A stretch of DNA of 64,000 bases from Botryllus schlosseri (Eukaryota). Positions within the stretch are counted from its first letter, which is position 1. Each line of letters opens with the position of its first letter. Positions 42,726 to 63,008 of this stretch are shown here, piece by piece. The stretch lies in the NCBI GenBank assembly GCA_051294905.1, contig CM119382.1:8556001-8620000 (forward strand), given 5' to 3'. Both the position numbers and the translations under genes were made by a program. The notes under the pieces were generated by a model that was not told where the DNA came from, searched no databases, and saw nothing but the letters and a program-made list of their open reading frames with translations.

Positions 42726-42859
42726 AACGAATCCCTGGATTAACTCTCGCTGGTTTCAGCACTGCAATGGCTGCTGGCCTTGCCGGGGCTCACGCAATGG
42801 GACTAACGAACGAAGATTACCAGAAGATCATCAAAATGAGACAGCAACACATTGACGAT
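42726..42859 (+). CDS. HDAC4: HDAC exon 1 of model (candidate ATG 42767; [15 protein letters not shown] helix)
   Basis: tttgcag acceptor, gat|gtgagt donor, phase 0 into 46939; weak similarity to the Gln-rich helix. Confidence 0.7.
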
Positions 42860-45800
42860 GTGAGTGTAAGTTTGTGATTTGATTAAAATTGAGTTTTTCA
42901 TCTATTTCCTTCCCTGTGTATGAATTATACCGCTATGTTTTATTCTGTTCTTTATGGTGAGGGCAGTTGTAAAATAAATCTTGCAGATAACAGTACTCGT
43001 ATCATTCGGAAATGGTGATATAGTCTTGACTGCCTCATAGCTGAATATCAGGCTGATAACTGATCAAGATCAGATCAATCTCTGCCGGTATCTTACCAAT
43101 ATCTTCCCTCGATTTGATGGGGATTTGGACGTCAAAATTTGCGATAAATTACTAGCAATAATAAACACACTGATAGTGGGCATAAAGGAGAAAGAAAATA
43201 CGCTGTGAAGTGATCTATTTTATAAGGAAACTGATTTTGTAACCTTGTCGCTGCCAACTTATTATCAAAACAGTTGTTCTCATATTGTCAGAGGGTATTT
43301 TGACAGTAACATTCCGCTGTTTCTGCTAATGGAAATTCCTGAAACCAACCCACTGCCCTCCCACGTTGGTGCGGTTCAAATCTAGTCCTGCATTTTCCGT
43401 GAGCTGTCTTCACTTTGGTAATCTCAGATATGGTTTTACCTCAAACAGCCAAGGTAGTCTCTGATTCTGCTCACGTGGCTTGAATTTTAATTGTAATAGG
43501 CTGTAAAACAAAATTACCGAGTAATTAAGTAAAGCAAGCAGAGAAGGCCTACTCAAGTACTTAGAAGATGTTGCTAAGCTTAGTTACTGATTATCCTGGC
43601 TTGCGGACATCATCATCTATCTCTTTGCCACTGTACAGATTGGCTTTAATGAAAATGTGAAATTGACCTTGTTGTGTTAATGGGAACAGAATCAGCATTA
43701 TGGCTAGCATTATTGAGCCATTAGTACCGTAATATTAATGATTAGTACTGGGTGAATCCATTACAATGGTGGACTATCCTAGTCTTTGAAGTATGAATCC
43801 CTTTAGTACCTCACTTGTCATTAAAATAATTTTATTGTCAGGAATTTTTTATTCAAATTCGGATGTATTCCACTCAGCGGCATACCACTCGATGTAGCTA
43901 GTCACTCAATTATATTAATACCTGTGGTTTTTCTCAGCCTGTAATTTTAAGTGTCTCTCCCATTTGTCATGACTCACTGACGTTTCTTGTATCTCTATCT
44001 GTGTAATCAAAATATGAGTGGTGCAGCTGCCCTGCTTAGTGGGTATCACAAATGGCCACTTTAAACTCGTGCTGTTTTCCCACTATTCCAAATACCTTGC
44101 CTGGCTATTTATTGTCTTTTGAGGATTGGTTCACACAAGGCCGACAACTTTTTGCGCCTTAACGGGCTGGTGTAATTCTGTTGAATCTATGATATAATTT
44201 GGTTCTAAATTAGCCAAAATACAAATTCGTCCCATGGTCTCATTAAAGTTTTGACGTTTGCATGATGCATTAACCTTAAATACCTTAACTGTCAATAATC
44301 AAGTGTATGTTGAGTGACCAATAACCTACCCTACAGTCGGAAGAGATCGTCGATTGAAAATTTCTTACATGAGCCTATATTATTAATTCATTATTATAAT
44401 TATATTATGATTCACATTAAGGGATTTACACTTTACAGGCATCTCTACTCCAATTGTCCACTATCAGTATCTTTTAGAGTCCTATGCTCTCAGTATTGCA
44501 ATGATTTTAAGAACAGATTAACCTATAATTCGAAAGCATAATCATATTCATCTTTTCAATTGTATATTGAAGTTCTGTACCTCAAGGAAGCTCTACAGAT
44601 TAATCTGTGGTTATAACATCACTAGAATATTTCTGCAGTATTACATTCCACTCTGGAACTGGCGATGACATTTGATTTGATTGATGGCCACCTTTGTGAT
44701 GCGATAATCAAGTTTATTTATGTATCAAACAATATTTTTGTAATAAACTTGGTATCTTTTTCGACATCTGATCCATACTAATAACAAACACTGGGCTGCT
44801 TAATCTTTGCGTTTTTCAATCGTGCCCAACGCTTGGTAATTGGATCTTTCGCAATTTCGGAATGGAAAGCGCGCACTGTCGTTATCTTGAGGTCGATCAT
44901 GACCTGAACTGAAAGTCACCATATCATCTCAGCTAAAAATAGATTATAGGTTCCTAGAAATGCATCATAGAGAACACTCTGTGCTAGATGGGCGAGTCTT
45001 GACGATTTGATCAAGGATTAATTTGCAAAGGTACCAAAAAAATAGGGGAATTGTGGCTTGAATAAATCATGAGCTACAAGTCGTAGAACCGTCCGTGCAT
45101 GGTCGCTGGGGATAACCGCTAATTATGTGTAAGTTGTGATGAAATTAGTATCATCATTAGTATCACGATAGTGAATATGTGAAACCTTTTGGGTTAATTT
45201 CTGAAAGGCCCTGTTTCAGATTACCAAATCACGTTGACATTGTTTGAATTTGCGTAAGGAATACCTAAATTTGTTGTCTGCACAGATGGGTTATTACCAG
45301 AATCAGAATGTGTTTGATATTGTGGAATCGCTGGATACATAGTAATTATTGCAAACTATGTAGTAATTGTCCTGCTACTGCAGTCATGCTTGTGGGCTGT
45401 GATTTGTGAAGTTATTTGTGATTACTCTTTTAGTTTCTGGCTCGACAGCAACTGCAGCATCATTTCCAAGTGAGTAAACCATCCGTTTCTTTATATTACT
45501 TGCTTAATTGCTTCGAATGTTAAGTGCATCCGTCCTTTTATCTATAATATCACAAAATACTTGACATTTTATGAGTGGTTTGCTTATACTGATACTGATA
45601 GGTAATCCTAAGGTACATTTGTAACCGCAGCGCTGGCCTGGCATTTGAAGTGGATTCCCGGAAAGCCGGGGTATTAATATAGCAATTTGGGTTGTGAATT
45701 AACAACAGAGGGTGAATGTTCTTCCATATTTAGAATATCATGTCATTAAAACAAGGATGATGGTACCATGTCTTCTGTACTTTATGTAGATGATCAAATG

Positions 45801-48800
45801 ACTATTTGCTCGGAAACATTTACGACTATTCATAGCAATCTATTTATAGTAATAAGACTGATGTGTACATGTATGATGTGGGGATCTGGTCATGTTATTT
45901 ATACGATTCATGTAGCCCTGAAACCTATTCCGAGCAAGCATTTCCTTTACTGTGATCGAGGGCCTTTGATTTCACTGTTTTTATTTACAAAGCGACCTCG
46001 CAATTAGAGGTCGCGTTTGTTTTTATGACTGAAAGGTATTTTGGAACTTTCGATTTTAATCTCTGACACTATCGATTATTTCGAGCATGAGTCACAGGGA
46101 AATTGGATGTCTTAATATAGCTCCATAGGGTGCCAGGACAATATTATGATTTCAATAAATCCTATTGATTTTTTTTTGGGGCGTATTGAGGCGTGTCCGG
46201 TTTTTGATGATAAAACGTGTTCAAAAATGACCTTTTTTTTCTCAAATTGTACTGGCTACTTGATAAAATTGTTAGGTTACCTAATTAAAGGCTGCACACC
46301 AAATTCAGTTCCAACCAGTAGCCTCATTGCTACGAAAGAAAGTTATTTATTTATTATATAAAAATAAATGAATTTTTGTTTCAAAATTCTACATTTACCC
46401 CATGAAATAGTTAGGTTGTCTATAGAAAAGATTCTCACCGAATTTGGCTCAATTCCAACCAGTGAAAGCGGAGTTATTGTAGTTGACTTTGGATTTGAAT
46501 AAAATAGTAGGCCTACTTGCGGTGGCAAATTCTTCAATTATTTTTTATAGTTTTGCCCATCGTAAATACTATGATTTGAAATCTCAAATTTTGAACATCA
46601 ATAACTTTGTTTCTTCTGGTTGGAATTGAGCGAAATTTGTTGTGCATCGTTTTTTCACACAATCCACCAATTTTATGAGGCAAGCCAGCAAAATTAAAAA
46701 AAAAATCATATTTATTTTCATTAAATAAATCCAAAACTTTTTCTCTTATGGCAATGCCACAGTATGTCGGAATTGAGCCAAATTTAGTGTGCAGCTTTTT
46801 TGTAGGTACCGGTAACCTAATTTTATCAAGTAGCCAGTACAATTTGAAAGCAAAAGTCTTTTTTGAACAGCCCTAGTGTTTAGTGACCGCATTATTGAGT
46901 AGTAATTTGGTGCAAATGTGATTTTGTTTGCTCTTTAGCAATTGCTCCAAAGCCAGCAGCAGGAGCACAACGCTGCCAAAAGCCAACTACGGCAACAGTT
47001 GGAGGAACAACACCATAATGATCTAATGAATCAAGTATTGAACAAAGACAAAAGCCTTGAGAGTAAGCCGGGCCCGGTTATAGCTTTTGAAATCAATGCG
47101 ACGGTGTGGGTACATTTTAGGTGCGAACGCGTCCACCGCCGTGAAGCAGCACCTGGCGAATTTTGTAATCGGTAGGCGGAGTGTTAAAAAGTACGACGGT
47201 TATCCAAACAGTGCAAGGTAAACGGATATGTTGGTTTGGCGATCGCTCAATGTCAGGGGGTGTGTCTGTTTGATGTGTGCCGTGAAGTTGGTGAATGTAT
47301 TTTGTATTTTTCCTGTCTGTGCTCTGCTAATGATTGCTTAGTTTTCTCAAAGTCAGAGGCTGTAGCTAGTAAAATACCCAATAAATGTGACATCACTCTG
47401 ACACTATTGCATTGCGGCTTGCAGTCATAGAAGTGATGAGACGCAGTGCCAGGAATAGTATAAAAAAACTTGGTGGTGAAAAGTTAAGCGATCGAACGTG
47501 AGATCGTCGTGAATTGAAATCCGAGAGAAGTTGAATGTTTAAATTTGAAAACACGGTGAGGTGGGTCAAAATCATCATGTTCAGCCTGTACAGGTTATGT
47601 CAAATTGTCCATGCATTGTTTATATTACTATTTTCTATGGATTTGAGTGGTTGTCAAGGAGTTCGGCACTTAGAGATTATGGCATTAGAAATGCAATGAC
47701 TATTATTGTCATGGAATTAATGTATCGATATTGTATTAATAAATATGAAAATGAATGTTTCACTGAATGTGAGTGTGAACTGTGATATATACCCAACTTG
47801 GCGAATTTGGTGATAGGCGTTAGCAGGGTTGCCAGATTGGCCCTTTTTAGAGGCAGTTGGTCCCCCCAAATTTTGTTAGGCCCCTTGGCTCTCTGTTTTC
47901 AATATTTGGCTCTATTTGAAAGCAGTTGGCATATAGTATCAAACTAGCTATCTTTTGATGAAAAATCCAAAAAATTAAGCATATAAGTTCGATAAGTTTC
48001 AAATTTTAAATTAAAATTCAGAAAATTTAATCATTAGAATTTTCACAACTCTCATATTATAACAAAGTTTTACATAACGAATTTATATACAATTGGAAAA
48101 GTCTTGAAATATTAGCAGTTGTCGACCGTGTCCCACAATACTATCAACAGTTGTGGTAGATTTGGTGTCCCAACAGTATCAACAATATAAATCTGGCATT
48201 CCCAGTGATTGACAAAAGGTGTATAGGTAATATTGCGACGTTATCGACGTTTTTAACATTATTAACAACGTTATTGAACAATTTAGGAATTTTTAGACAC
48301 TGTTTGGTCCTTTTTCTCGAAAGCTGTCTGCCAACCCGGGGCGTTAGGGGTAGGGTTAGGATTCGGGGCCGCCAAATGTCGAATTCACTCGTATTTGAGT
48401 ATCTGGATTCAACTTCTCATCTCTTGATTCGGAATGGCTTGCGTTTTGTTTCAGCGGTCGGAGTTTAAGGTGGACCCCGTCTCTGGACAACAGAAACGGA
48501 CACCACGATCTCGCCGCGCCCTATCCCCACGTGTTCGACAAGAAGAACAGTTTCCCTCTCCGAAAAACCGGTATTATTTTGCGAATTTCTTCCGTCTTCG
48601 CGGCATTTTTTATCGTCTTTTTCCGGTAGCGTCGGAGCCTAATCTGAAAGTGCGGTCGAAACTTCGTCACAAAGTCGCGAACAATGACAGACGCTGCTCG
48701 CCGTTACTTCCGAGGCACGGCGGCGTCACAGGTAGCCGTGCCGAAGTGAATGATCACATAAAGAGAAAACTCAATAATGACCAAGGTAACTTAACGATAT

Positions 48801-51800
48801 AATTCATCAACACAGTCATAAGCTTGTGATGCCGTTAGTCTAGTGATGTAATGATTGCGTTGTCGTAACACGCCGCTTATCTTGCAGGGAATGCAGATAA
48901 CTCTGCTAGTAGCAGCGCTCCCAATTCAGGACCTAGTTCGCCGCTAAGCAGCAACAGCAATATTAACAATAGCTCTGCCGGGCCAGTGCACTCTACCGCG
49001 GGAATGGGACTACATGGCTCTGAGGTTTGGAGTGATATGTTCTGTAACCATTTTTTTCCAACTTTTGTTTATTGCATGCAAGTATGCAACTACCATGGTG
49101 ACTATCCTTACATAATTTAAGATTGCGTTTCTTGTTTTGAATACCGGTATGATAGATAGTGATAGTTCATCAGATTAATGGCTTACCATTAGATACATAC
49201 TGTGAATTGATATGTATTTTGTGCTTAAGCTACTTATGTGTGGCACATGGCGCAGCAGCTATGATGTCCATATCTCATAAGCGTCATCCGATTGTGTCTT
49301 GTTTATAGCATTGTATACTTCGTGTGTGCAAATAAAAAATAATAAGACCGCTGATGATTTCTGAGAGCACATATTTTGAAAGAATGTTCAATGATAATTT
49401 TATTACTTTAAAAGGAAGGTAGAAAAGATAGTCTAATTATAACGATAGATTGATTATTTCTTTTGCAATTTTTGTGACTTAGCATAGCACAAAGCATAGC
49501 ACATAGCTTCAAGTACCTTCATATTTTTGACTTGGTTTGTGAAGTTTCTGAAGTTCGCACAGTGTCAAATATGCAACGAAAACTTGGGCCGTGTCGTTTT
49601 GATTATATGTTTCCGAGCGACGCCAATGTTATTACGAGCTGGCTAACCACACGTACGCGGGCCCAGAGGTAGTAATTACGGTCCCACATGCGCTCCTGAT
49701 GAGCGGCTCGTAATTGTCTCGTTTCGTTTCTCTTCAGAGCGAACTGGCTGCCATACATTCATTGGTCGGATTCAGGCCGAACGCGATCCACGCGTCGCCT
49801 TCGCTACCTAACATTTCTTTGGAGCTCTCGCAGAAAAAATCGGTAAAATTTTTTCTGCAGGTTACCCTGTGCATGCCGCGGTGTTTTCTTTGTTTGCGTG
49901 CGTCATTTTCCGGGCTTGCTACATTGCGATGGTTATGTTCTGTGATAGATTTCACTTTCACATTATCTCACTTAATATGGAATTCAATTTTGATTGCGTT
50001 AAGATAAGAGATTGATTGTTGTTTTTGTGGGATAGCTCTTCGAAAATTTGTTTCTAATTTCGTGTTTGATATGTTTTTGCGGTAATGGGCCATGTTATTT
50101 TATGGACATCCGATTTTATGGGTCATTGAAGATATTGTGTGTGATGCTGTTGTTGCTGGTAGTGGATGTACCTTGTAATTTGTTAGTTGTGACGTGACAA
50201 TGAAATTGGTGGTTGTCCTTTCAAAGATGTGCTTCCTGCCTGAAAGTGATATAATCCTAGGTGGTCATCCATGAACTGCTACTGTAACAAAAGTATGAGA
50301 TCTTCAGTGTCAGCGTATTTAGTTATTGAGGACATGACACCACTTGATAAAATTGTGTGCAATTTTACAACTGCAACACAATTCTAAACCCCCTGTTGTT
50401 TTTTAATTGTCAGACGGGCATTGCATGGGAATGCACTGTCCCAAACAACTTTAAACTATTTTCCTGTGTGCTGTTCAAGCTACCCTCGCCCATATTGATT
50501 TTTAAACAGTAGAGGTATCAGTCATTATCAGTCCTTGAGGAGTAAAAATTTAATTTTTTACTTCTAATCGAGTAGGCTACAGTAATTTGACATTTCGCAT
50601 TTGGCATGTGGCAATGACGGTGTGATAATTTTATAGTTATGTTATGTTCATTTTTGAACTGGTGGCTTCATACCTTTTTGTTAAACTTCATGATACTCTC
50701 ATGATCTTCAAAATCTTGCAGCTAGTATTTGCGATTTTTTCTGTGCATGTTGTCATTTCGAAACCCACACCCGTTGGCACCCTTTAAGTGCATCTCGGGA
50801 GTAGGGAATAAGGATTGGTAGAATTCAGTGTGGAAGGACCCACGCCATGATTAAGATTTTTAGTGTATAGTAGCCTCTACTCGCCTATGAGCATTCCAAT
50901 GTGGAAGCCAACACTATGAGTTCACTTCGTGTACCGTGGACGTGGATGCTGAATGAAATTGTGAAAATATTGCGCTTGTATCAAAGTTGATGTTATCTCT
51001 TTTGCAGTGGTTCATTACCTTTTTTTTGGCCGGCTGCGTTGCTTGGAACCCCATTGCAAAAATGAAAATGTTCTGTATTGCACAGCCAGAGACCAGAGTA
51101 AAATTATAAAGGTCATCACCTCTGCCCATTCCTAATCACATTACCATCCGGTGCCTGATAAGCTACATGATGACTAAAAAAATATCATCACTTTGACTTG
51201 TGAAATATGGTGAGCGCTTAAGATAAGGACATAAATCAGAAATAAGGACATAGGCCTAACCCCCAAATAAAGACAGATCTTATAGAATTGAAAGCAATTT
51301 AGTTTTTATAGCTGCAGTTTCACCTAGCTACTAGCTCATGGACCCCAAGTTGAGAACCCCTGCTCAAGTGTGCTGCGCGATTCATTGTGGGTTTAAAATC
51401 AAATGAGTGTGAGTCTATCACCAATTGATGCTGATACTGAGCACAGGCCGCTCACAAAGTCGCCTTGTGCACAACACCCACTGCCGCTTGAAAATCTGAT
51501 GTTTAACGGCACCCTTCAGAATCCCAATCCTTTGCTGGCCGGATCTCAGCCTCGATTACTGATGTCGTATCCCGAGATGGAATTGCACAGGGCGGCGTTG
51601 GACCGTGCCAGGTCGCTGCCGTACGTGCATCATCAGAGCCAGCCTCAACCGTTCCCGTTCAAACCCTCGCCTATGGACATCGACCCCGTGATGGTACAGC
51701 AGCTTATTTTGCAGCAACAATTCGGTGAGTTGGGATATCACGCTCTTGCTCCATTTGAAGAAATCTTCAGCAATTTGTGTGATTTCCGATTGTTACCTTG

Positions 51801-54800
51801 TTTTGTACTATATCTCTACATTATCACTTCCATTTCTCAGCATATCAGATTCCGCCCCACATTATTGCAATCAATTCATCAATCTGTTATGAGGAGTTGC
51901 TCATGGTATCATGTTATTGTTGGGTGAGCAGAGAAAGATGAGAATTTTGCCTCATAGAAATTAGATACATATATATATCAATGAATATCATTATCTTCCT
52001 TTTCAGGTAGGCTACAGACTGTGTAACAGCATTCACATCTGTACAGTAGAGGGTTTCTCTGGGGTGCAATTATTTCAAAATAAAAGAAGTGTTGTGATAT
52101 TGATATTCTGGCAGTATATATCATGTATGACCATGACCATTGAACAATTTCTTGAAGCATTATCAGTAACTAGAGTTTTTATTTTTAATGAAGTTTCATT
52201 TCTTCCTATTCGAAGATATCAAGCAGTTTCTTAATTTCAGCCGGAGTCGGTGTCCCTTCACCTGAAAAAGATAAGCCTGGTCCGATGCGTCATTCTCAAC
52301 AGACTCGCCCGCACAAAGTCCTGAGCCGGACACACTCTGCGCCAACGACGTATGCGTTGCAGCAACACCTGGTACGATTTAACTACTGGTGTAGGTTGAA
52401 CATAGTGGCTGTGTTCTCCCATTGCTAATTACAAGTCTCACATCCTGTTGTGTCATTAACAATGCGATTCGCAATAAAGGGTAATTGAATTAATTGAATT
52501 CTTGGCAGCACGTATTTATTCACAATCGGTGATTGAAAGAAATGGTAGAAGCAGTTTGATGACACATGTATGAAGAAAGTGAAATTTTGCCAATCTTTCA
52601 GAAAATAACTTATTTCTCGTCTAGATTTGGTTACGTAAATAATCCAATTCAGCGGTGGTCAACGTAGACAGCTAGCTATTGAGGATAGAAGCTGGATTAT
52701 ACCATAAATTTTTACTCTTCTAAAATAAGATATCCAAAAAACTACTTAGTACCATCTGTAGTTTTAAAGTAGATTTGGTCAAGGCCTTTTAGTAATAGAA
52801 CGGCGGTTTCTAATAAAAACTCTCAGTTTCAATGATGTAGGGGCTAACTCATTTGGTTGTCATGACATTTTGACTCGCAAAAAGGATGCAAACCTAGCCC
52901 AAAACTACTCTCTCCTTCCCATGCAACGTGTATAAAACTGAGTGACTGTCGCGTAGAGGTCCTTAATTTTAATAACCGTAAGTAACTAAGTATCCTCGGA
53001 AGCCACAAAGAGACCGTAAGAAGAGAAGAGAAGTCTCGTTCTAAGTCGTCGCTGCTGTTCCTACAGAAAAAAAGACTAATGATGCAGCACTCGCAGCAGC
53101 CCGCGTCTCACAAGCATGCGCCCCACGTCATGTCTGGTCTGACCGCCGAACAGTACTGGCCGCTCGCCACCCATCAGGAAACGGCCGAACGCGCCGAGGC
53201 CCCCACACAGGCTTCTGCTAAGCAGAGGAAGCAAAAGCTGGCGGCATCTCCGCCTCCGACACACCCCGCGGCTATATCGACTACTACGGTGCAGGCGTTG
53301 CAGTCCCATCTCAACAAGCACAGCAACAAGGGGTTGGGACAGTTTGGGAAGCAGTCGGACGGCGCGCGGCACTCGCCGCTTGAGCGGACTGCGACCACAC
53401 CAGAGAAATCGCGGTTGGTATTTTTTATTTTTCCTGTATGTGATTTTTTACTTTATTCTCTAGTTCTTTATCTTTCAATTTTTTCAATTTTCATTAAACC
53501 CATTTTATTGCAATGTTTGAATTTTGCGTTTTTTGATTCTGTCCTCTAGGCAGGGTTGACACACTGTCCTTTCATTTCTGTAAATCTTGTTAATTATATT
53601 TTTATTTGATTATTTGTAATGTTATAGTTTTGATTTTTGCTGTACTGTCTTGTACGCAGGGTTGCCATACGGTCCTGATTTGTCCTTATTTTAAAGAGCG
53701 GTGTTTTATAAAAGTATATTGTCCTTATTTACAAGACGTGGCCTTATTTTTCACATGTGTCCGTATTCAGTCTTGTTCTCAGTGCTGATGACAATAGTTA
53801 CCAAGTATCTATGAGGCAACGAGGCTGTGATTAGCACTGGGCCTAAGTAATGACCTTTTTGTCATCAGCATGACAAATTTCGAGATTAGGCTGCTTAAAG
53901 TTTTTGGTTGGCCTTAAATTTTGATCCACGTCGATAGCAGCCCTGCATATAGGCCTTGATTTATACTGGTTATTGAACTATTGCCAATTATGACGTGTGA
54001 TTCTAAATATGCAGAAGACATTATCCTAGTGAGCAAAGCGGTATTGATAATGATTTGAATATATGCAATTCGATACCGTTTGTAATGGGTTTCAATGGTT
54101 TGATGGCCAGCGAATTGCTTGTTAGCAGATATTGAGTCTTGAAATTAGATTTGTTGCTGTGTTTGTGTGGTGTTTCGGATTGAGAATTTAAATCAGAGTC
54201 TGTGTCTTTGATCCAGTCTTAATCTATAGCCAATGATATTGGATTTTGAAATAAGAAGACGTTGATACCCCTTCGTGTGATTATGCAATATTTGCAGTTG
54301 ATCTGGAAACCAATTTGATACGCGCCCAGTGTGTGGCCTAGGGCTAGGCTATTGGATCTAGGAATTGGCGATTGACAGCCGCTCTTATGTGTTTGTGTGA
54401 TATTTGCATATAGGCCAGCGCATTTGGAATTGAAATCAGTGTCGCCTGCATATTTGATACCCTTGTTATGGGTAGTCTATGTTATTGGATCTTGAAATTG
54501 GAAGAGATTGATACTCGTTTCAGATGTGTTGGCGTGATGTTGCGATGATTCCATATGGTATATTATAGGCCAGGCCAGAGTCAATTTGGAATCAAAATCA
54601 ATAGTGTCTAGTGTCTGCGGATTTGATGCGCTCCCAGTGTGTGTCCGATGCTGTTGCATCTTGAAATCGATGCTAGTCCTAATGTGTTAGTGTATGTTGC
54701 TATATTTGCTTACAACTCCAACGCATTTTGAAGGCAAATCAGTATTGTCTGGAAATTTGTTACGCTCCTAATGTGTAGCATATCGCACATGCACACATGT

Positions 54801-57800
54801 TAGTCCGTATTGGTCTCAAATTGAGGCTAGCTCCCGTAGAGAACTTGGGTCTGAAACATAGTAGACAACGATAGGCGTTAGGCTATATCACAATATCACA
54901 GCATCCCCTAATCTCTTTCGTATTTGTAAAATCTCCAGATCGCACAAGCCCATACAATCCGCTCTGTCGAATGACAAGAGAGATATGGTCGTAGTAAAAC
55001 GAGAGGCGCCCGATAACGACGAACTCAAAGACTACCCGACGCCATCCAGACACGTGACCTTACAGGACAATAGGGTAAGAAATAACTGGTTGGAAGCCCT
55101 GAAGAATTATTATTCAACAATGTGATTGCAGGTAAAACCATCGCCTTTGCAAGCGCGTCGTTCGCTTCTAGACGGCGATCTAGGCGCACATAAACCTGTG
55201 ACGAGGACGAAGAGTTTACCGGCTGCCGCTATCACTCAGCAATCGAAGCACAAGGTGGGATTCCTGTTTTTACTGTGTTTTTGTAATTACTTGTGTAGAA
55301 GAGACGCATCTCGTACTCTGAACAGTAAATTTCACATAGTCTGTAAATTTTTCATGTTGCCACCAACACATCCTCCAAGTCTTAGGATGTACGATACACC
55401 AAAAGTGGAATAGGATCGTGTGCATTCGGCCTAAATCCAAAAGTTGTGGTGTGATTTGAGCCCAAATTCAACAGTTGATGTCTTTTATATCGCTAATCAG
55501 TAGAGTGGTCATTAGACCTGATTTAAACCCAAAATATGAATCAATGTTGAACCTGGGCTGACCCGGATCTGAATAGCTACTTCTACTTGCACTTGCGTAG
55601 AAATTTACGAAATTACTTTTACTACTATGGCCACCTCTGGGTGTTATCCACCTGACTGACAAGGAAAACAAAAGACAAGAGTAGCAATGCTGCTTGTTTT
55701 TCAGAATTATCGCTACACGACGGGCTTAGCCTACGACCCGGTCATGCTGCGCCACGGCTGCGCTTGCGGCGACGCGCACGCCGAACACGAGGGCAGATTG
55801 AGAGAGGTGTGGTCTCGGTTGACGAGCGTGGGGCTGACGGAAAGATGCGAGCTGATAGAAGCGCGAAAAGCGACAATGGAGGAATTGCAACTGGCGCACA
55901 CCAAGGAACACACGATAAGATACGGCGCTACCACGCTGGCTAGACAACAGTCGGGTATGTGGACACTAAACTATATTCGTTGTAACTTCATTGAGGAAGC
56001 TCATTCCATTTTTGGTATAATATAACATAATCGGGGTTGTCAACGATAGCAACAATAATTTTGAGTTACCCAACCGCCACTAATGTCTGAAAAATCGCAT
56101 TTGAGCATGCCGCACAATAAATAATGCTCGAGTGCATCCCCACCGACCATATTTAATGATTAATGTATCCAGAGAGTTACGAATTGCAATTGTCATAGAA
56201 TATGTAAACAGTATTATTGAGTACGATTTTTAGTGAAACTGTGAGTACAAATGTTATTAATAGTTGCGCTAACTGCCTGCCCCATTAAACAATATAACCC
56301 AAATATATCGACTCTTGCAAAGTGTTGCTGACCGTTGTCACATCGCATTCACACAATGCCAAGCTAGGTGGTAGGCAAGGAACGTTGCATAGGGTTACCA
56401 TACTTCCTCTTTTAGAAAGATTGGTTCCCCTTTTTCAAGAAAACTCCAAGTGACGTTTGAGCTAGTAGCTTTTGAAAAATGACTTTATTTTTAGTCAACA
56501 CAACAGTATTTTGAGTCAAAATGTTCAAATTACCCGTATTCTCGTACGGTTTTATAAGTTTTGTGATTTGTAAAAAGTGTCCTCTTTACCGGATCTCAAA
56601 ATTTGGTAGCAGTTATTGATGATGATGCAATTCGTTTTGACCTCCACTTAACTGCACCTCAGCAGGAACAAATTGCTATATATCCGAAATAATTATCTAG
56701 TATTGTTAAATCGAAATCCAACGTTGCGCTATTATTTTCAGTCGTGTCAGACAAGTTCATTGTCTTGCCGTGCGGTGGCGTTGGCGTCGACATCGACACG
56801 GTTTGGAACGAGCAGGACACGATCAACGCTGGTAAGCTTTACAACATCAAACTGTATCATGTTTCCTTTTGATGTGACGCGTTCAATCATAATTTCAGCA
56901 CGAATGGCCGTCGGACTAACGGTAGACATGGCGCTGAGCGTTGCGGCTGACGAGTTGAAGAATGGTTTTGCCGTAGTACGCCCGCCTGGTCACCATGCGG
57001 AAAGTAATTTGGCAATGTGAGTGAATTTATTCGATTATGGGGAATGGTTTTAGTGTCCGGATTGAATTTTGGCAGTGCTTTAGGGAAATTTTGTCTTCAT
57101 AATGAATAATGGCAAACTTTCATTACCGTACAGATTTTATTTTGGTCAACTTTTATATTAATATTGTATCGTGATTGAATATATCCTCATTTTTATAATC
57201 AGTTGTCACCAGATTGAATTTTGGCTAAATTTTATGCATATTTCATGTGCAGAACAATGGCTCTAATGAGAACCATCATACACTTGACTTTACACACCTG
57301 TTTTGTTTATCGTGATTCAACTATTGCCACACTTCGCGTACAGTACATCTTAGCTTTTGTCTCCACCCAGTCTAACCTCCAGACCTCGCACAGGGCGTTC
57401 TGCTATTTCAACTCTGTCGCCATCGCCGCCAGACGGCTGCAGAGAATGTACCCGGACAAGATCAGGCGCGTGCTGATCGTGGACTGGGACGTCCACCATT
57501 GTAACGGGACTCAAAATATATTCTACGACGACGACTCTGTGCTCGTGGTGTCAATACATCGATATGATGAAGGAAATTTTTTCCCCGGAACTGGAGCTCC
57601 GGATGAGGTAACGAGCGCGCCGGGCTTATTTTGTGCCTGCCCGGACCAGAGGTGGTCAGTAAGGATGTACTTACACTTGGCAGTAGTTTCGGTATGTCTT
57701 CGAAATATATACCGCTACTCGTTGTTGAATAGAAATGAACGGTTTTACTTCTACTTGAGAACCAACGTTGACCACTCTGAGTCTGCGATGTCGTCTGTCG

Positions 57801-60800
57801 AATTGTAATTTCGATACTGGTTTTGTCTCTGGATCGAATTTCGGCAATGTTGTACAGTAATTTTTTGTCTGTATTAAATTAAAACTTGCATACTAAATTT
57901 GGCAAACTTTAGTACTAATTTTGTCTCCAGATACAATTCATTCTCATTTCCTCTCAGGATTGAACGTTGAAGAACTGATATATGCTTATTTTGTATATGA
58001 ATTGATATTGGCAATCTGCTGCAGAAATTTTATCCTGTGTTAAATTTTGGTTAACTTTGATCTGGCATTTCCCAAACCTTAACACTAATTTTGTCTCGGG
58101 ATTGAATTTGTACTGATTTTATTCTGCGGATTGAAGTTTGGCAAATATTTATACGAATTGTATACTTACATACTCATTATGACGACCTTCGCCCTGGACG
58201 CGGGTTTGATGTTTGCGCCTTCTTTTTCAGACCGGTTCCGGATCCGGAGTTGGCTTCAACGTCAATATCGGCTTTAGCGGCGGATTGGAACCGCCAATCG
58301 GAGACGCCGACTACCTCGCCGCGTTCCGTTCCGTTATCATGCCAATCGCCGAGGAATTCAAGCCCGATTTCGTGTTTGTGTCCGCGGGGTTTTCGGCCGC
58401 CGAAGGCCACCCGTCTGCCCTGGGAGGGTATTCGGTGACGCCGCAATGTAAGTCGTTTCTAGGTTTTGTGCTGGGCAATGTGTGCGTTTACGTTGTAAAT
58501 TCGGCTGGCCACATTGATTCGAGTTGAGTAGTTACAGGATTTTTTGGAGTATACTGAAATTATACACTCCTTGTCGACAAAAGGAGTTCGTGTACCATCT
58601 AAAGATAGCGCATTTAATGCTCTCTTATTCGAAATTTCACGCTGGTGACGTCATATTTTGTGATACAATTGCTGGTATACAATGTTCTTTCCAATTCTCT
58701 ACTAGTTGCTGACGATCACCCCTGACGAGTGTCAGCCGAAAAATATTCGGGTTCATTTCAATATGAATATACTATTCACTTGTATATTGAAGTTCTGTAC
58801 CTCCAAGAAGCTCTTAGAGAATTAATTTAACAACAAAAATCATACCTTTGATATAGTATATGTTGTGGCTTTGTACAATTTGGTGTGTGTGTGTGTGTGT
58901 CTGTGTGTGTGGAGGACAGTAACGAATCACCTCTACGTAGACTTTTTCAGACTTTATTTAGATTTTGTCAAGTAGAACATATTTTGGGGGATGTGTTTCC
59001 AGCACGTTTACGTGTGAAATTGGCATAATCACTGGGTGAAATAATTTGCCGTTAGTCAGTTGGCGTTAATCGCAAAAATGTGGAGATTGCACACTGCAAT
59101 TTCAAAAGTAGCTACCCACTAAAAGTACGCAAAGTCTCTACCGAATCTCCAACAGAAAACTGCTTTCTTAATAATTTTCAAATATTAATTTCCTACTCTC
59201 ACTTTCGAGAAGAAGTTTTAACGTATCTCGGAAATTGGTACTTCTTTATGTCGTTGTGTCTACGTCTTGAGTAGGCTACCTCATCTAGTCGCTCGTCACA
59301 TTTGTAATCGACCTGTCGCGTCCTATTTCTCGCTATTCTAATTTGGGTAGCTTATGTATAATGCAAATCCCTGTGACGGTATCGCCTGTGTGTTGTGTTC
59401 TATTTTCGGAAAATGTCTCTGTGTATCGAGCACTGATGACCTTTGTGAAAGAGCTCGCCCGCATTAATCTGTAATGAGATGTTTGTGTGTGAGGTATATG
59501 CGTAAGCCGTTTCTGCATCACAACAGAAGACATAGGCATGTACAAACTATTGGATTTCAAAATGTGCAACTAGAACTAGAACTAGAACTAGAACTACTTG
59601 CTTTTCAAGAGCGGCAACTAGAACTAAAACTACTCAAAATAACAGTAGTTAGTAAAAAGTCAACTGACGAACTGGATTGGCAGTTTGTACAAGTTTGGAC
59701 CGTGTAGCTTGGAAGCTGTGTACTTGGGATTTTCTGCTATCGTTTCAGATTGTTAATGAGATGATTTTGTCTTCCACCTTCTTGCCGAGCAAATACCAAT
59801 TATAACCTAGCCTAAGGGTGGGTTTTTACTAATTACTTATTGGGCATTTTATGTGATGATTAGTGCTGTCCGGTCACAATTGTTACTATTAATAGCACTG
59901 TTTGAAAATAGGCAGTTTCTATCTTTGAATTGGCCTTGTGTTGTTATTGATGTCAGTGTTGAGGTCATGGGTCGTTGACCTGTGTTTTTGGCTTCCGCCA
60001 TGATGCCAAGTAACTATCAATCAGACGTAAGGCCTAAGGGTGGGTTTTTACTGATTATCTTATACCAGGGCTGCCCAACCTTTCCGACCAAAGGGCCACA
60101 TTCGATTGACGAACGTTTGCGCGGGCCAATATCCGCGCCAAGCGCGAAAATTTTTTGAAGTTCATAGGTCAATAATATTGTCATTTGACTATATTGCGGG
60201 CCTGCTGTATATCGCTGGGCTATGTTTGCGAGGACTTGGCTATTTGGCGCATGGACATATCGATATCGAAAGCTGCGACCAACATGCGTCAATCATTTCG
60301 TGCCTATAGGTTTCATAGTCGACGGTCTTACTGCGAGAGCAAACGCAAGGTCGCATATGTTGAACGACACTTTGTCTCGTAATCGCGAATATAGCTAGAC
60401 TCAATCTGATACATTAGGTGTTCTTCCATTTTCACAAAAGGGCAACAATATTAAAAACCAGAAATCCAGTGACAACATTTTGCGCTAAGCTTGTAGAAAA
60501 TTTTTACCTTTGATAAATCAATCGCAAATTATTCTGCTTTATTGTAGCGTACGAAGATATACCAATATGTGAATGGCTGATGGATCTGTCAATGCGTCGG
60601 AACTGATATTTTAGTCATCACTTGCGGTCAGACTAATCAAAATTTTGGTTGGCCCTGCAAGTTCGCAATCTGTGCAATCCATTTTTGATGATATTAGAAA
60701 TTTCGGAAATTATCTCGCGGGCCACTCAAAACCTTCTCGCGGGCCACATGTGGCCCGCGGTCCACGGGTTGGCCGGCCCTGTCTTATACCCTATAATATT

Positions 60801-63008
60801 TGGCGATTTGTGCTGTCTGATTATCATTGATCCTATTAATAGTACATGTAGAAAATAGGAGGAATTGAGCGTGCTTGTAAATAGAGGTCAAAGTAGTCGT
60901 CATTGGTACTCAAGCACGATTAGGAGTAGTGATTTCCGAGTAGGTGGACACTGGACATGTAAGTAAGTATTCTGGGCTTAGTTTTGCGTAAAAAGACTCG
61001 AAACTGTTGAGTACAAGTGGAAGTAGTCTTAAGCCATTATAACCCGAGTAAGTAGTGAAGGTAGGTGAAATCTACTTGAGTACTTTACTGAACTGACTCT
61101 GGTCGCTACTGTTACTGTTGCGGTCATGGGTTGTTGACCTTGGCAAATTCCCGTTACAGGTTTCAGTTACCTCACGAAACGACTGTCGCAACTGGCTGAC
61201 GGGAAGCTCGTTATGGTTCTGGAAGGCGGTTTCGAACTGAAGTCTCTTTGCGACTGCGTCGAAATCAGTGTCCGAACGCTGCTAGCAGACCGTCAGGAGC
61301 AGGACGTTTCTGTGGCGGACCTGCCCGAATCTTCCCTAAACCGGGCCCCGTGTGAAAACGCGGTCCGATCCATCAACAGAATCTCGCGATACCAAGGTGG
61401 GCAACAATGTTTTTACTGTTTTTCTGAATTCTCTACTAGTAGCTGATGATTGCCCCCGATGAATGTCAGCCGAAGATATTCAGGTTGTTTCAATATGAAT
61501 TTAAATTCAGATATGGCAATGCTATAGCTTACATTCCTAGTGTATAAGTTATTGGAGTGGTCTCGAACGAAAGCTACTGTAGCACTGATTTTCTGATACG
61601 ATCAATTATATTCCGGTCGGGCACTGTATATTCCCTATAATTGTCCTTAAAAGTCTAAAATCAGCATTGTTCCGAACAATGAAGGCGTCGCAGTACGGTC
61701 GGTTATGATCTATAGTTGAAGTCCATATCCGGTATTGACAGAATTGTTTGAAAGTCGCATAAAAACTGTGAATTATTGGAAATTCTACCCGTAAATCGTA
61801 GTCGTAAATCAGTTCCTAATCTGGCCAACATCTTTAAATCCATTTTTACAAATCCAATTCCATGCTCTTCTCTGGTGGATCGAATAAAGAATTTTTCTCA
61901 ATTTTCTCAGAGAGGTACTGGTGTAAGTTGAAGCGTATGTCGGCTTACATCAACGTGGCACACGCCACATACCTGGACCAGGATCCAGAGGACCGGGCCT
62001 GCGTGGCGATCGCCTCACTTACTGTGGAACACCCGAAGCACACGGACAGCAAAGGTAAGCAGAGACAATTTCGCCAGTGCACTACTATATTGTTATGTAG
62101 CGTTTCATGGCGCTGGAAATTTTTGAACTGAAATGTTTGCTTCGATGCGATGTCACTTGAATGTCAAAGTAGGGTGTTCAAATATTTGATTGGTCTGGTT
62201 GGCTTGAATCTGGAAAATTTGCCTGATTGAAATTAGCATAGTCAGTCATGAGACTATATATAGTCATGGGGTGGTCAAGTCGTTTTTATTAGGGCTGTAA
62301 CCAAGGCACAGGGTTCCAAGTCACCAGTTCATTTGATTTTTATAGTTTTGACTCGAGTCATTTTAATTCACCACGTAGTCAAGTCCTAGTCATAGCGTTA
62401 AGACTCAAGTCCGAGTCAAAGTGTTTACTGTTCAGTATCGAGCTCAAGTCAGGTTTAACTCACTTCGCTAAAACTCTTGGGTGATATCGAAGGCCTCGGA
62501 TTCATAATACACTTATTATTCTCACTCTAAACATGTTTATTCAAACAGATAATGGACAATTTCTGGGCCTATTTTTCAATTAGCGATCCTGATATACGAG
62601 ACTTGAAAAAGTTATATAGAATGTGTCGTGTCATATGACTTTACAATGAGCAGTTTTGCATAACCCGACTTTATGATTCACCCAGCCAAGTTACGGGAAG
62701 CGTCCACCACCAAGGCCCCAAACCGACCGCCTGCCCCGCTCGTGACCGGCCCCGACCACACACGACTCTCGGTCATCGCGGACGACAACGAAGACCCACG
62801 GACGCAGAATCGTGACGAAGCGATGAGCGCGGAGTCCTCGCCACTCGACGTGGTAGGACTGTCCCCGTCTTCCGAGTCTCCGGCCTCGTCGCCCAGCCGC
62901 GCCAGGCCGTTCGTGGCCCGGGACCAGGGTGGTTCGGACAAGCCGGGCGTGTCCAAAGAGGAGCCGATGGAGGACGAGGATTGTGATGTAACGACTGATA
63001 ATACGTAG
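42767..63008 (+). CDS. HDAC4: Class IIa histone deacetylase (HDAC4/5/7/9 orthologue), 20 coding exons, ~1120 aa, degenerate active site
   Basis: Hand-spliced exons: 42726-42859, 46939-47062, 47121-47217, 48455-48570, 48630-48785, 48888-49024, 49738-49842, 51520-51724, 52241-52371, 53067-53413, 54939-55074, 55132-55254, 55705-55954, 56742-56831, 56899-57016, 57394-57607, 58231-58447, 61160-61396, 61911-62054, 62686-63008. All introns are GT-AG and all phases join with no internal stop. HDAC4-like motifs: [108 protein letters not shown]. The start is tentative (in-frame gcaATGg at 42767); upstream exons are unresolved. Confidence 0.95.
46225..46874. mobile_element. Long-TIR foldback MITE (tagggctgttcaaaaa family)
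   Basis: ~110-bp inverted arms; related copies at ~17397-17520, ~30121-30400 and 63440-64000. Confidence 0.8.
46939..47062 (+). CDS. HDAC4: HDAC exon, Gln-rich helix ([10 protein letters not shown]...LNKDKSLE)
   Basis: ctctttag acceptor, a|gtaagc donor, resembles QQLKNKEKGKE. Confidence 0.88.
47121..47217 (+). CDS. HDAC4: HDAC exon, MEF2-binding motif ([19 protein letters not shown])
   Basis: 58-bp intron upstream; matches SAVASTEVKMKLQEFVLNK. Confidence 0.92.
47824..48205. mobile_element. hAT-like MITE in an HDAC intron
   Basis: Ends cagggttgccagatt / aatctggcattccca. Confidence 0.55.
48455..48570 (+). CDS. HDAC4: HDAC exon (...[12 protein letters not shown])
   Basis: tttcag acceptor, g|gtatta donor, matches DDFPLRKT. 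Confidence 0.92.
48630..48785 (+). CDS. HDAC4: HDAC exon, 14-3-3 site and NLS ([16 protein letters not shown]...RRCSPLL)
   Basis: 59-bp intron upstream; matches [25 protein letters not shown]. Confidence 0.95.
48888..49024 (+). CDS. HDAC4: HDAC exon ([15 protein letters not shown])
   Basis: cttgcag acceptor; matches SACSSAPGSGPSSP. Confidence 0.9.
49738..49842 (+). CDS. HDAC4: HDAC exon ([13 protein letters not shown])
   Basis: tcttcag acceptor, tcg|gtaaaa donor; matches YTSPSLPNITLGL. Confidence 0.9.
51520..51724 (+). CDS. HDAC4: HDAC exon (NPNPLL...RARSLP...QQLILQQQF)
   Basis: cccttcag acceptor gives the required phase 0; g|gtgagt donor. Confidence 0.8.
52241..52371 (+). CDS. HDAC4: HDAC exon, 14-3-3 site ([11 protein letters not shown])
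   Basis: ttaatttcag acceptor; matches HRPLGRTQSAP. Confidence 0.92.
53067..53413 (+). CDS. HDAC4: HDAC exon, low-complexity linker
   Basis: cctacag acceptor, cg|gttggt donor, phases fit both neighbours, GC-rich coding-like composition. Confidence 0.82.
54080..54830. repeat. Degenerate intronic tandem array (~130-170 bp units)
   Basis: Recurring atttgatac...cagtgtgtg and tattggatcttgaaattgg motifs. Confidence 0.6.
54939..55074 (+). CDS. HDAC4: HDAC exon with SUMO consensus VKRE
   Basis: ctccag acceptor, agg|gtaaga donor; only one frame is open; equivalent to VKQE. Confidence 0.85.
55132..55254 (+). CDS. HDAC4: HDAC exon, 14-3-3 site ([11 protein letters not shown])
   Basis: 57-bp intron upstream; matches HRPLSRAQSSP. 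Confidence 0.9.
55705..55954 (+). CDS. HDAC4: HDAC catalytic domain exon 1 ([17 protein letters not shown]...HAEHEGR)
   Basis: clear class IIa domain start with structural-zinc Cys/His. Confidence 0.97.
56742..56831 (+). CDS. HDAC4: HDAC catalytic exon ([16 protein letters not shown])
   Basis: motif match; an alternative in-frame acceptor at 56751 is possible. Confidence 0.95.
56899..57016 (+). CDS. HDAC4: HDAC catalytic exon ([17 protein letters not shown])
   Basis: motif match; His-His dyad intact. Confidence 0.97.
57394..57607 (+). CDS. HDAC4: HDAC catalytic exon (AFCYFNS...[12 protein letters not shown]...[11 protein letters not shown])
   Basis: motif match; gag|gtaacg donor. Confidence 0.97.
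58231..58447 (+). CDS. HDAC4: HDAC catalytic exon ([11 protein letters not shown]...[12 protein letters not shown])
   Basis: motif match; the Asp of SAGFDA reads Ser. Confidence 0.97.
58882..58910. repeat. (GT)n microsatellite
   Basis: direct read. Confidence 0.95.
60066..60781. mobile_element. hAT (Charlie-type) MITE, 716 bp, in an HDAC intron
   Basis: TIR cagggctgcccaacc / ggttggccggccctg, perfect TSD tcttatac (60058-60065, 60782-60789). Confidence 0.92.
61160..61396 (+). CDS. HDAC4: HDAC catalytic exon (CFSYLTKRL...LEGGFEL)
   Basis: ttacag acceptor; matches CFGYLTKQL...LEGGHDL. Confidence 0.97.
61911..62054 (+). CDS. HDAC4: HDAC exon with NES-like segment (CVAIASLTV)
   Basis: ttttctcag acceptor, g|gtaagc donor; matches TVTAMASLSV. 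Confidence 0.92.
62291..62530 (+). mobile_element. Partial copy of the GACTCGAGTC MITE family
   Basis: Starts agggctgtaaccaagg, colinear with 27033-27330. Confidence 0.75.
62686..63008 (+). CDS. HDAC4: HDAC terminal exon (...[17 protein letters not shown])
   Basis: cccag acceptor, phase fits, EEPME matches the HDAC4 C-terminus. Confidence 0.88.

What the first reader, a model, noticed from the sequence alone, without database searches (positions are those of the whole stretch)
58381..58410. Class IIa HDAC has lost a catalytic-zinc ligand (SAGFDA reads SAGFSA): candidate pseudo-deacetylase
Seen: codons tcc gcg ggg ttt TCG gcc gcc gaa ggc cac, with Ser (TCG, 58393-58395) inside an otherwise well-conserved exon. 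Established: zinc-dependent HDACs bind the catalytic Zn with Asp-His-Asp (HDAC4 D840, H842, D934), and the Asp of this SAGFDA-type motif is essentially invariant. GAY to TCG needs three base changes, so a single sequencing error is unlikely. The other two ligands (DVH) are intact and the gene is full length with no stops. Inference: this is a maintained gene whose product cannot bind catalytic zinc normally, which goes further than the weak activity of vertebrate class IIa enzymes and points to a pure scaffold or acetyl-lysine reader.
Basis: partly seen in the sequence, partly recalled or inferred. Interest (0 to 1): 0.92.

Follow-up and report, generated by a model that had tools for sequence, protein, structure and literature searches.

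The report
Tunicate class IIa HDAC: dead deacetylase
The sea-squirt version of the HDAC4-type gene regulator has lost one of its three catalytic zinc-binding residues plus three neighbouring active-site residues, yet selection has kept the rest of the enzyme-like domain intact across all sampled tunicates, a natural test of whether these regulators need enzyme activity.

Summary
Codon 58393-58395 is TCG (Ser), at the position of HDAC4 Asp934, a catalytic-zinc ligand. It is unchanged in spliced mRNA contigs from five independent studies.

It is not peculiar to this gene. All 11 full-length tunicate class IIa HDACs recovered share four active-site changes:
- G811A
- G844C
- D934S (Ala in two pelagic forms)
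- Tyr/His976 to Phe

These include Styela, Ciona, Clavelina, Phallusia and pelagic forms from ocean surveys. Amphioxus, a hemichordate, insects, a brachiopod and vertebrates keep G, G, D and Y or H.

Of 92 positions nearly invariant in other class IIa enzymes, only these three are replaced in the tunicates tested.

The domain is under strong purifying selection:
- 20 synonymous against 1 non-synonymous polymorphism
- dN about 0.1 against Styela, with dS saturated

The structural-zinc ligands, 20 of 21 SMRT-docking residues, the MEF2 motif and the 14-3-3 sites are retained.

Best reading: an obligate pseudo-deacetylase fixed once in a tunicate ancestor and kept as a signal-responsive corepressor adaptor. 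Zinc loss and partner binding are inferred, not measured. I found no paper describing this. I class it as a new variant of a known kind.

The parts
42767..63008 (+). Class IIa HDAC gene, from the first exon matched by the Styela orthologue to the stop codon. The true 5' end was not determined.
   Evidence: tblastn of Styela clava and Ciona class IIa proteins onto the window. Stop TAG at 63006-63008.
55705..61396 (+). Deacetylase-like domain in six exons: 55705-55954, 56742-56830, 56898-57016, 57394-57607, 58231-58447, 61160-61396. Spliced product is 375 aa without stops.
   Evidence: Spliced translation. All five splice joints are seen in RNA contigs. Pfam PF00850 matches the five exons tested.
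58393..58395 (+). TCG, Ser at the position of HDAC4 Asp934 (catalytic-zinc ligand)
   Evidence: Invariant in reads and contigs. Ser in 9 and Ala in 2 of 11 full-length tunicate orthologues.
57395..57397 (+). GCG, Ala at the position of HDAC4 Gly811 (end of the H803-G811 loop that forms the cleft wall)
   Evidence: Ala in 11 of 11 tunicates, Gly in 44 of 45 other class IIa (the remaining row is a gap).
57500..57502 (+). TGT, Cys at the position of HDAC4 Gly844 (DWDVHHCNG; two residues after zinc ligand His842)
   Evidence: Cys in 11 of 11 tunicates, Gly elsewhere. G844 is a rim residue needed for SMRT binding in human HDAC4.
61231..61233 (+). TTC, Phe at the position of HDAC4 His976 (Tyr in active deacetylases)
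   Evidence: Phe in 11 of 11 tunicates. Tyr in 28 and His in 17 of the others.
57482..57496 (+). Retained D838, D840 and H842 (DWDVH): the potassium-site Asp and the two remaining catalytic-zinc ligands
56991..56996 (+). Retained tandem His802-His803 (RPPGHHAE)
55753..55788 (+). Class IIa-specific structural-zinc ligands H665, C667, C669, H675 and H678 ([13 protein letters not shown]). C751 lies at 56771-56773.
47132..47167 (+). MEF2-binding motif [12 protein letters not shown] (HDAC4 L175, F178 and V179 kept)
   Evidence: tblastn with a primate HDAC4. Coordinates.
48552..48649 (+). First 14-3-3 phospho-site, FPLRKT|ASEPNLK, spliced across an intron (HDAC4 Ser246 site)
52321..52344 (+). Second 14-3-3-type site, LSRTHSAP (HDAC4 Ser467 site by motif)
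   Evidence: The correspondence to Ser467 rests on my knowledge of the HDAC4 motif.
55201..55221 (+). Third 14-3-3-type site, TRTKSLP (HDAC4 Ser632 site by motif)
   Evidence: The correspondence rests on my knowledge of the HDAC4 motif.
62003..62032 (+). C-terminal [10 protein letters not shown], resembling the class IIa nuclear export signal
   Evidence: The resemblance to the export signal is from my knowledge and was not tested.

Best explanation
This is the single class IIa HDAC (HDAC4/5/7/9 orthologue) of a stolidobranch ascidian close to Styela. Its deacetylase-like domain is an obligate pseudoenzyme.

In an ancestor of all tunicates sampled, the catalytic centre was remodelled at four positions:
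- Zinc ligand Asp934 became Ser (later Ala in some pelagic forms).
- The transition-state Tyr became Phe.
- Two otherwise invariant glycines beside the metal site and substrate cleft became Ala (811) and Cys (844).

The protein therefore most likely neither holds the catalytic zinc normally nor hydrolyses acetyl-lysine (inferred).

The rest of the domain has been kept by purifying selection: the class IIa structural-zinc module and almost the whole rim that docks SMRT/NCoR in human HDAC4. The N-terminal MEF2-binding motif and the 14-3-3 phospho-sites are kept too.

The most likely working mode is a signal-regulated corepressor adaptor. It would be brought to DNA by MEF2, exported on phosphorylation, and use the dead domain as a docking surface for an NCoR/SMRT-HDAC3-type partner (inferred).
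For: Shown:
- Ser codon in the window, and in mRNA from five studies, spliced as modelled.
- The signature A811/C844/S-or-A934/F976 is in 11 of 11 full-length tunicate sequences. It is absent from 45 other class IIa sequences, including amphioxus and a hemichordate.
- With the four columns masked, the tunicate sequences form one clade with 100/100 support on a 0.54 stem.
- Of 92 positions at least 95% invariant outside tunicates, only 811, 844 and 934 are replaced in the five tunicates tested, and 73 are kept in all five.
- Polymorphisms are 20 synonymous to 1 non-synonymous.
- dN is 0.10-0.115 against Styela, with dS saturated.
- 20 of the 21 HDAC4 surface residues required for SMRT RD3c binding are kept.
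- All structural-zinc ligands are kept.
- The MEF2 motif and 14-3-3 sites are kept.
- An AlphaFold model of the Styela domain has pLDDT 90 and matches SMRT-bound closed HDAC4 (5ZOO) at TM 0.90 and rmsd 1.7 A.
- Annotated tunicates show one class IIa gene each, as does a preprint.

From the literature: the catalytic zinc is held by D840, H842 and D934.
Against: - No biochemistry exists: zinc occupancy, activity and partner binding are all unmeasured.
- In human HDAC4, D934N abolishes NCoR1/HDAC3 co-precipitation, and a G844 mutation weakens SMRT RD3c and HDAC3 association. Two of the four tunicate changes therefore hit positions that matter for the very docking proposed. It would have to be retained through co-adaptation.
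- Cys844 is invariant and next to the remaining ligands, so a rebuilt metal site is not excluded.
- Whether tunicate NCoR carries the GSI docking motifs could not be checked.
- Appendicularians were not sampled.
- The structure model is of the Styela orthologue (82.6% identical), not of the window protein.
Confidence: 0.62

Rival explanations
1. Rebuilt metal centre. Cys844 replaces Asp934 as the third ligand (Asp840-His842-Cys844), so the domain still binds a metal. It might then have an altered catalytic, ligand-binding or redox-sensing function.
For: - Cys844 is invariant in 11 of 11 tunicates at a position that is Gly in every other class IIa and class IIb sequence examined.
- It lies two residues after ligand His842.
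- Position 934 itself tolerates Ser or Ala. The Ser hydroxyl is therefore not what is conserved.
- The tandem His, D838, D840, H842 and N845 all remain.
Against: - Phe976 removes the transition-state hydroxyl, and Ala811 alters the wall of the cleft leading to the catalytic site. That pattern fits abandonment of hydrolysis rather than retuning.
- G844 is described as a surface residue on the rim of the entry site.
- No coordinates were available, so the Cys-to-metal distance could not be measured.
Confidence: 0.1
2. Dead domain kept for something other than corepressor docking. NCoR/SMRT-HDAC3 recruitment would have been lost together with catalysis. The fold would persist for export-signal presentation, regulated intramolecular contacts, oligomerisation or an unknown partner, and repression would run through the N-terminal half, as in the domain-less HDAC9 isoform MITR.
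For: - Human HDAC4 D934N and H803A lose NCoR1/HDAC3.
- G844 mutants lose SMRT RD3c and HDAC3 association.
- The tunicate stem branch is long, at 0.54.
- That N-terminal fragments suffice for MEF2 repression is my own knowledge and was not tested here.
Against: - 20 of 21 SMRT-binding surface residues and all structural-zinc ligands are kept.
- The only replacements at invariant sites are at the catalytic centre.
- The model resembles the closed, SMRT-binding conformation more than the open one: rmsd 1.7 A against 5.1-5.3 A.
Confidence: 0.2
3. Artefact or decaying copy: a sequencing or assembly error, or a pseudogenised duplicate beside an intact paralogue.
For: - A preprint reports a duplicated class IIa gene in Botryllus schlosseri. 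The species of the window is not known to me.
- One RNA run holds two variants of the exon that differ at five sites.
Against: - The codon is the same in five independent RNA data sets and in the DNA.
- Both variants in that run keep TCG and differ only at synonymous third positions.
- The change is shared across tunicates.
- pN/pS is about 0.016.
- The domain has no stops or frameshifts.
Confidence: 0.01

Closest known systems
Vertebrate class IIa HDACs (HDAC4, 5, 7, 9)
   Same: - Same family and architecture: N-terminal MEF2 motif, 14-3-3 sites, C-terminal deacetylase fold with the class IIa structural-zinc module.
- 53-56% identity over the domain.
- Both have lost the catalytic Tyr, and reviews already call the vertebrate proteins 'pseudoenzymes'.
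   Different: - Vertebrates keep all three zinc ligands and both glycines. They have His at 976 and retain weak activity, notably on trifluoroacetyl-lysine (my knowledge).
- Tunicates have Phe at 976, lack ligand Asp934, and carry A811 and C844.
Class IIa HDACs of amphioxus, hemichordates, insects and brachiopods
   Same: Orthologous single-copy genes with the same domain and structural-zinc ligands.
   Different: They keep G811, G844, D934 and Tyr976, the presumed active ancestral state.
Engineered human HDAC4 D934N, H803A and G844 mutants
   Same: They change the same positions (934, 844) as the natural tunicate protein.
   Different: In the human protein these single changes abolish NCoR1/SMRT-HDAC3 association. 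The tunicate protein carries four co-fixed changes and is under strong selection, so it may be compensated. This is untested.
MITR/HDRP, the HDAC9 isoform without a deacetylase domain
   Same: A class IIa product that represses MEF2 without any catalytic capacity (my knowledge, not tested here).
   Different: MITR lacks the domain altogether. Tunicates keep a full, conserved, folded domain.
Copepod class IIa HDAC (Lepeophtheirus salmonis)
   Same: Independent natural loss of a catalytic-zinc ligand in a class IIa HDAC.
   Different: A different ligand is lost (D840 to Ala). G811, G844 and D934 are kept, and Tyr976 is kept in the named species.

Membership tests
Class IIa HDAC (HDAC4/5/7/9 orthologue) | Histone deacetylase domain (Pfam PF00850) | tested here: met
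   The five exons tested match successive parts of PF00850, best E 2e-29. The tested exon hits HDAC4 and HDAC7 structures at about 1e-29.
Class IIa HDAC (HDAC4/5/7/9 orthologue) | Class IIa-specific structural-zinc ligands (H665, C667, C669, H675, H678, C751) | tested here: met
   All six are present in the window protein.
Class IIa HDAC (HDAC4/5/7/9 orthologue) | N-terminal MEF2-binding motif and 14-3-3 phospho-serine sites | tested here: met
   [12 protein letters not shown] aligns to HDAC4 165-183 with L175, F178 and V179 kept. RKTASEPNLK aligns to the Ser246 site. Two further RxxS sites are present.
Class IIa HDAC (HDAC4/5/7/9 orthologue) | Groups with class IIa and apart from class IIb in a tree | tested here: met
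   The class IIa clade has 100/100 support against an HDAC6 outgroup. The window is sister to Styela.
Active zinc-dependent lysine deacetylase | Asp-His-Asp catalytic-zinc triad (HDAC4 D840, H842, D934) | tested here: not met
   D840 and H842 are present; 934 is Ser.
Active zinc-dependent lysine deacetylase | Transition-state Tyr (HDAC4 position 976) | tested here: not met
   Phe, codon TTC at 61231-61233.
Active zinc-dependent lysine deacetylase | Tandem catalytic His (H802, H803) | tested here: met
   RPPGHHAE.
Active zinc-dependent lysine deacetylase | Measurable deacetylase activity and catalytic-zinc occupancy | not testable with these tools
   Needs recombinant protein.
Pseudoenzyme (conserved inactive homologue) | Loss of residues essential for catalysis | tested here: met
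   D934S and Y976F, plus G811A and G844C.
Pseudoenzyme (conserved inactive homologue) | Maintained by purifying selection over long time | tested here: met
   - 20 synonymous to 1 non-synonymous polymorphisms.
- dN about 0.1 with saturated dS against Styela.
- Signature shared across stolidobranch, phlebobranch, aplousobranch and pelagic lineages.
SMRT/NCoR-docking class IIa domain | Surface residues required for SMRT RD3c binding in HDAC4 (21 residues of Kim et al. 2015) | tested here: inconclusive
   20 of 21 are kept. The exception is G844C, itself a position whose mutation disrupts binding in human HDAC4. D934N also disrupts binding.

The most novel reading that the evidence does not exclude
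Tunicate class IIa HDACs did not simply die. They carry a re-engineered Asp840-His842-Cys844 metal centre, with G844C taking over from D934. This would give the domain a new metal-dependent function, such as a redox- or thiol-sensitive switch or a different acyl or ligand specificity, in the sister group of vertebrates.

A second, milder novel reading: loss of the catalytic Tyr in both tunicates (Phe) and vertebrates (His) reflects release from catalysis already in their common ancestor.
Probability: 0.1. Interest if true: 0.85.

Novelty: new variant of a known kind. Interest (0 to 1): 0.62.

Why it matters
Whether class IIa HDACs need their residual enzyme activity, or act only as adaptors, is a long-running question. 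It bears on how class IIa-selective inhibitors are interpreted.

Tunicates are the closest living relatives of vertebrates. Here their only class IIa gene has lacked a zinc ligand and the transition-state residue since before the ascidian lineages split. Yet the fold, the structural-zinc module and nearly all of the corepressor-docking rim are conserved.

That is a natural loss-of-catalysis experiment in a genetically tractable chordate (Ciona). It makes three things directly testable:
- whether the domain is needed at all
- what the domain binds
- whether the four co-fixed changes compensate for one another

It also shows, together with the copepod and other cases seen in passing, that loss of a metal ligand recurs in this family.

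Tried and rejected
- **Raw RNA reads.** The one bulk run served as raw reads (X23) gave zero depth on the exons at the 6% of the run that was read. Assembled contigs of older runs were used instead.
- **NG86, LWL85 and YN00 dS** against Styela could not be computed because synonymous sites are saturated. Only dN and a maximum-likelihood estimate are quoted.
- **First word-index search** with the domain was flooded by two-domain HDAC6 proteins. A second search with the class IIa-specific N-terminal region listed the tunicate genes cleanly.
- **Hammerhead idea.** A hammerhead-like string (CTGAyGAG...GAAA) sits in a very highly transcribed intronic repeat near 58720. It was checked against Rfam at gathering and at E up to 1, with no hammerhead match. 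Idea dropped.
- **Alternative exon.** I looked for a mutually exclusive exon carrying Asp. None exists in the window.
- **Lahm et al. 2007**, which may contain an alignment with non-vertebrate class IIa sequences, is not held. Prior notice of the tunicate state there cannot be excluded.
- **Cys844 geometry.** Distances between Cys844 and the remaining ligands could not be measured, because model coordinates are not exposed.
- **Species.** The species of the window and the organisms behind the ocean-survey contigs could not be named. 'Pelagic tunicate' is inferred from the tree and the sample type.
- **Second paralogue.** This genome could not be scanned for one.
Full report
**What is there**

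They lie in an exon (58231-58447) that translates to [72 protein letters not shown].

That exon hits the HDAC4 and HDAC7 catalytic domains in the PDB at about 1e-29. In the printed HDAC6 alignments the Ser stands opposite the Asp of aGFDA.

Six exons between 55705 and 61396 splice into a 375-residue deacetylase domain without stops. The five exons tested match successive parts of Pfam PF00850.

Numbering on a primate HDAC4 (offset checked on the HQCTCG motif) places the Ser at HDAC4 position 934. D840 and H842 are intact. A crystallographic paper states that the catalytic zinc of HDAC4 is held by D840, H842 and D934.

**Is it real and expressed?**

- Assembled RNA contigs from public runs of the same species join the exons at all five modelled splice sites.
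- A second, narrow lay on the exon gave a complete list of differences. The runs came from three further studies plus the DNA of the probable source sample.
- Five sites vary: 58296, 58332, 58350, 58356 and 58386. None touches the Ser codon. The contigs continue into the flanking exons' sequence.
- Contigs of two more studies cover the codon with only 58296 differing.
- No other copy of this exon exists in the window.
- The raw-read RNA run had no depth on the exons at the fraction read, so this support rests on contigs.

**It is a clade character, not a quirk**

An exhaustive profile search with the exon returned 150 class IIa and IIb representatives. I mapped 29 functional positions onto them. 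One group stands out with four departures at once: Ala for G811, Cys for G844, Ser for D934, and Phe for the Tyr/His at 976.

The named members are all tunicates:
- Styela clava
- Ciona intestinalis
- Ciona savignyi (a fragment)
- Clavelina lepadiformis
- Phallusia mammillata

The unnamed members are intron-free transcripts from Tara Oceans and other marine surveys, and from one transcriptome run.

Amphioxus, a hemichordate, insects, a brachiopod and vertebrates all have G, G, D and Y or H.

With the four signature columns masked, the 11 full-length tunicate-type sequences form one clade. Support is 100/100, on a stem of 0.54 changes per site. The window is sister to two Styela sequences. The marine-survey forms nest beside Ciona, Clavelina and Phallusia.

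The remodelling therefore predates the split between stolidobranchs and the other ascidian and pelagic lineages. Appendicularians were not found in the searches, so 'all tunicates' is not shown.

**The changes are targeted**

Among 92 alignment positions at least 95% invariant in 45 non-tunicate class IIa sequences, exactly three are replaced in the five tunicates then in hand: 811, 844 and 934. Seventy-three are unchanged in all five. Position 976 is the fourth change; it varies between Tyr and His elsewhere.

What the literature says about these positions:
- G811 closes the H803-G811 loop that forms the wall of the cleft leading to the zinc.
- G844 lies on the rim of the entry site, two residues after ligand H842.

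If about 14 of the 92 invariant positions are counted as catalytic-centre residues, three out of three falling among them has a chance of roughly 0.003. The set was defined after the fact, so this is only a rough guide.

Two pelagic sequences have Ala (GCA) rather than Ser at 934, and the Ser codons elsewhere are TCG, TCT and TCA. The hydroxyl at 934 is therefore not what selection keeps. By contrast A811, C844 and F976 are invariant in the clade.

**The gene is maintained**

- Twenty-one exonic differences between the window and RNA contigs of other individuals are listed. Twenty are synonymous third-position changes and one is non-synonymous (E to K at 61261).
- With 271 synonymous and 854 non-synonymous sites, pN/pS is about 0.016. 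One search did not print all differences, so the count is a sample.
- Against the Styela clava coding sequence, recovered from its genomic locus, the domain is 82.6% identical in protein. dN is 0.10-0.115, and synonymous sites are saturated.

**What else is kept**

- All six structural-zinc ligands of the class IIa module are present.
- So are the tandem His, D838, N845, F812, F870/F871 and L943.
- A mutagenesis study found 21 HDAC4 surface residues to be required for binding SMRT RD3c. The window protein keeps 20; the exception is G844C.
- Upstream exons encode a MEF2-binding motif with L175, F178 and V179 kept.
- They also encode the RKTASEPNLK 14-3-3 site, spliced across an intron, and two further RxxS sites. 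A C-terminal export-signal-like stretch precedes a stop at 63006.
- An AlphaFold model of the Styela domain is confident (pLDDT 90.4, pTM 0.93).
- That model is closest to HDAC4 bound to a SMRT peptide in the closed conformation (TM 0.90, rmsd 1.7 A). Open, inhibitor-bound HDAC4 structures fit at 5.1-5.3 A.

**Interpretation**

The most likely mechanism is a signal-responsive MEF2 corepressor whose dead domain serves as a docking module.

Two published results temper the docking step:
- Human HDAC4 D934N (and H803A) no longer co-precipitates NCoR1/HDAC3.
- A G844 mutant shows compromised SMRT and HDAC3 association.

So there are three options. The four changes may be mutually compensating and co-adapted with the tunicate corepressor. 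The domain may dock something else. Or, less likely, Cys844 rebuilds a metal site. None of these can be settled with sequence tools.

**Single copy?**

Searches with the domain and with the class IIa-specific N-terminal region found one gene per annotated tunicate: Styela, Ciona, Clavelina and Phallusia. A preprint reports a single class IIa gene in ascidian genomes, apart from a duplication in Botryllus schlosseri.

One RNA run holds two variants of the exon, differing at five synonymous sites. Both carry TCG. This genome itself could not be scanned.

**Novelty**

Eight full-text searches found reviews that describe the Tyr-to-His change as a vertebrate event and call class IIa enzymes 'pseudoenzymes'. 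The searches combined class IIa or HDAC4 with Ciona, tunicate, urochordate, ascidian, pseudoenzyme and related terms. Nothing turned up on the tunicate active site.

The 2007 paper that first analysed the Tyr/His switch is not held, so earlier notice cannot be excluded.

The scan's own notes hold a first-reader entry on the Phe at 61213-61242 of this window. I confirmed it and found it to be part of the same signature.

I class the finding as a new variant of a known kind.

Noticed in passing
window 58555-58948 and 60131-60918 (intron between the Ser exon and the Phe exon): Two intronic repeats carry RNA-contig depths in the thousands to tens of thousands, against 5-80 on the exons, so they belong to high-copy transcribed repeat families. 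A hammerhead-like CTGAyGAG...GAAA string near 58720 has no Rfam support at E up to 1.
   Followed up: partly
P0102/P0177 (Lepeophtheirus salmonis) and unnamed P0058, P0074, P0077, P0106, P0122: Another group of class IIa HDACs has lost a different catalytic-zinc ligand (D840 to Ala, motif DAHH). Two unnamed members also have Phe at 976. This is an independent case of ligand loss, in a copepod by the one named member.
   Followed up: partly
P0118 cluster (12 members from JGI, Logan and ENA; also fragments P0144, P0145): Unnamed class IIa HDACs from environmental transcript assemblies have Asn at position 934 while keeping Tyr976 and both glycines.
   Followed up: no
P0112 (Trichomycterus), P0125 (Danionella), P0114, P0117, P0121, P0135, P0149: Extra HDAC4-like copies (two are named teleost proteins) carry Asn or Gly at 934 together with many other active-site changes. 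They look like decaying duplicates, unlike the tunicate gene.
   Followed up: no
HDAC4 position 678 in P0207, P0209, P0210, P0211, P0214, P0008, P0056: His678, a structural-zinc ligand of the open conformation in HDAC4, is Asn, Ser or Thr in Clavelina, Phallusia and the pelagic forms. It is kept in the window, Styela and Ciona.
   Followed up: no
window 55955-56741 and 56831-56897, against L003 37001-37369: The stretch that is a single exon in Styela clava (residues 697-819) is split by two introns in the window gene, so intron gain or loss has occurred within stolidobranchs.
   Followed up: no
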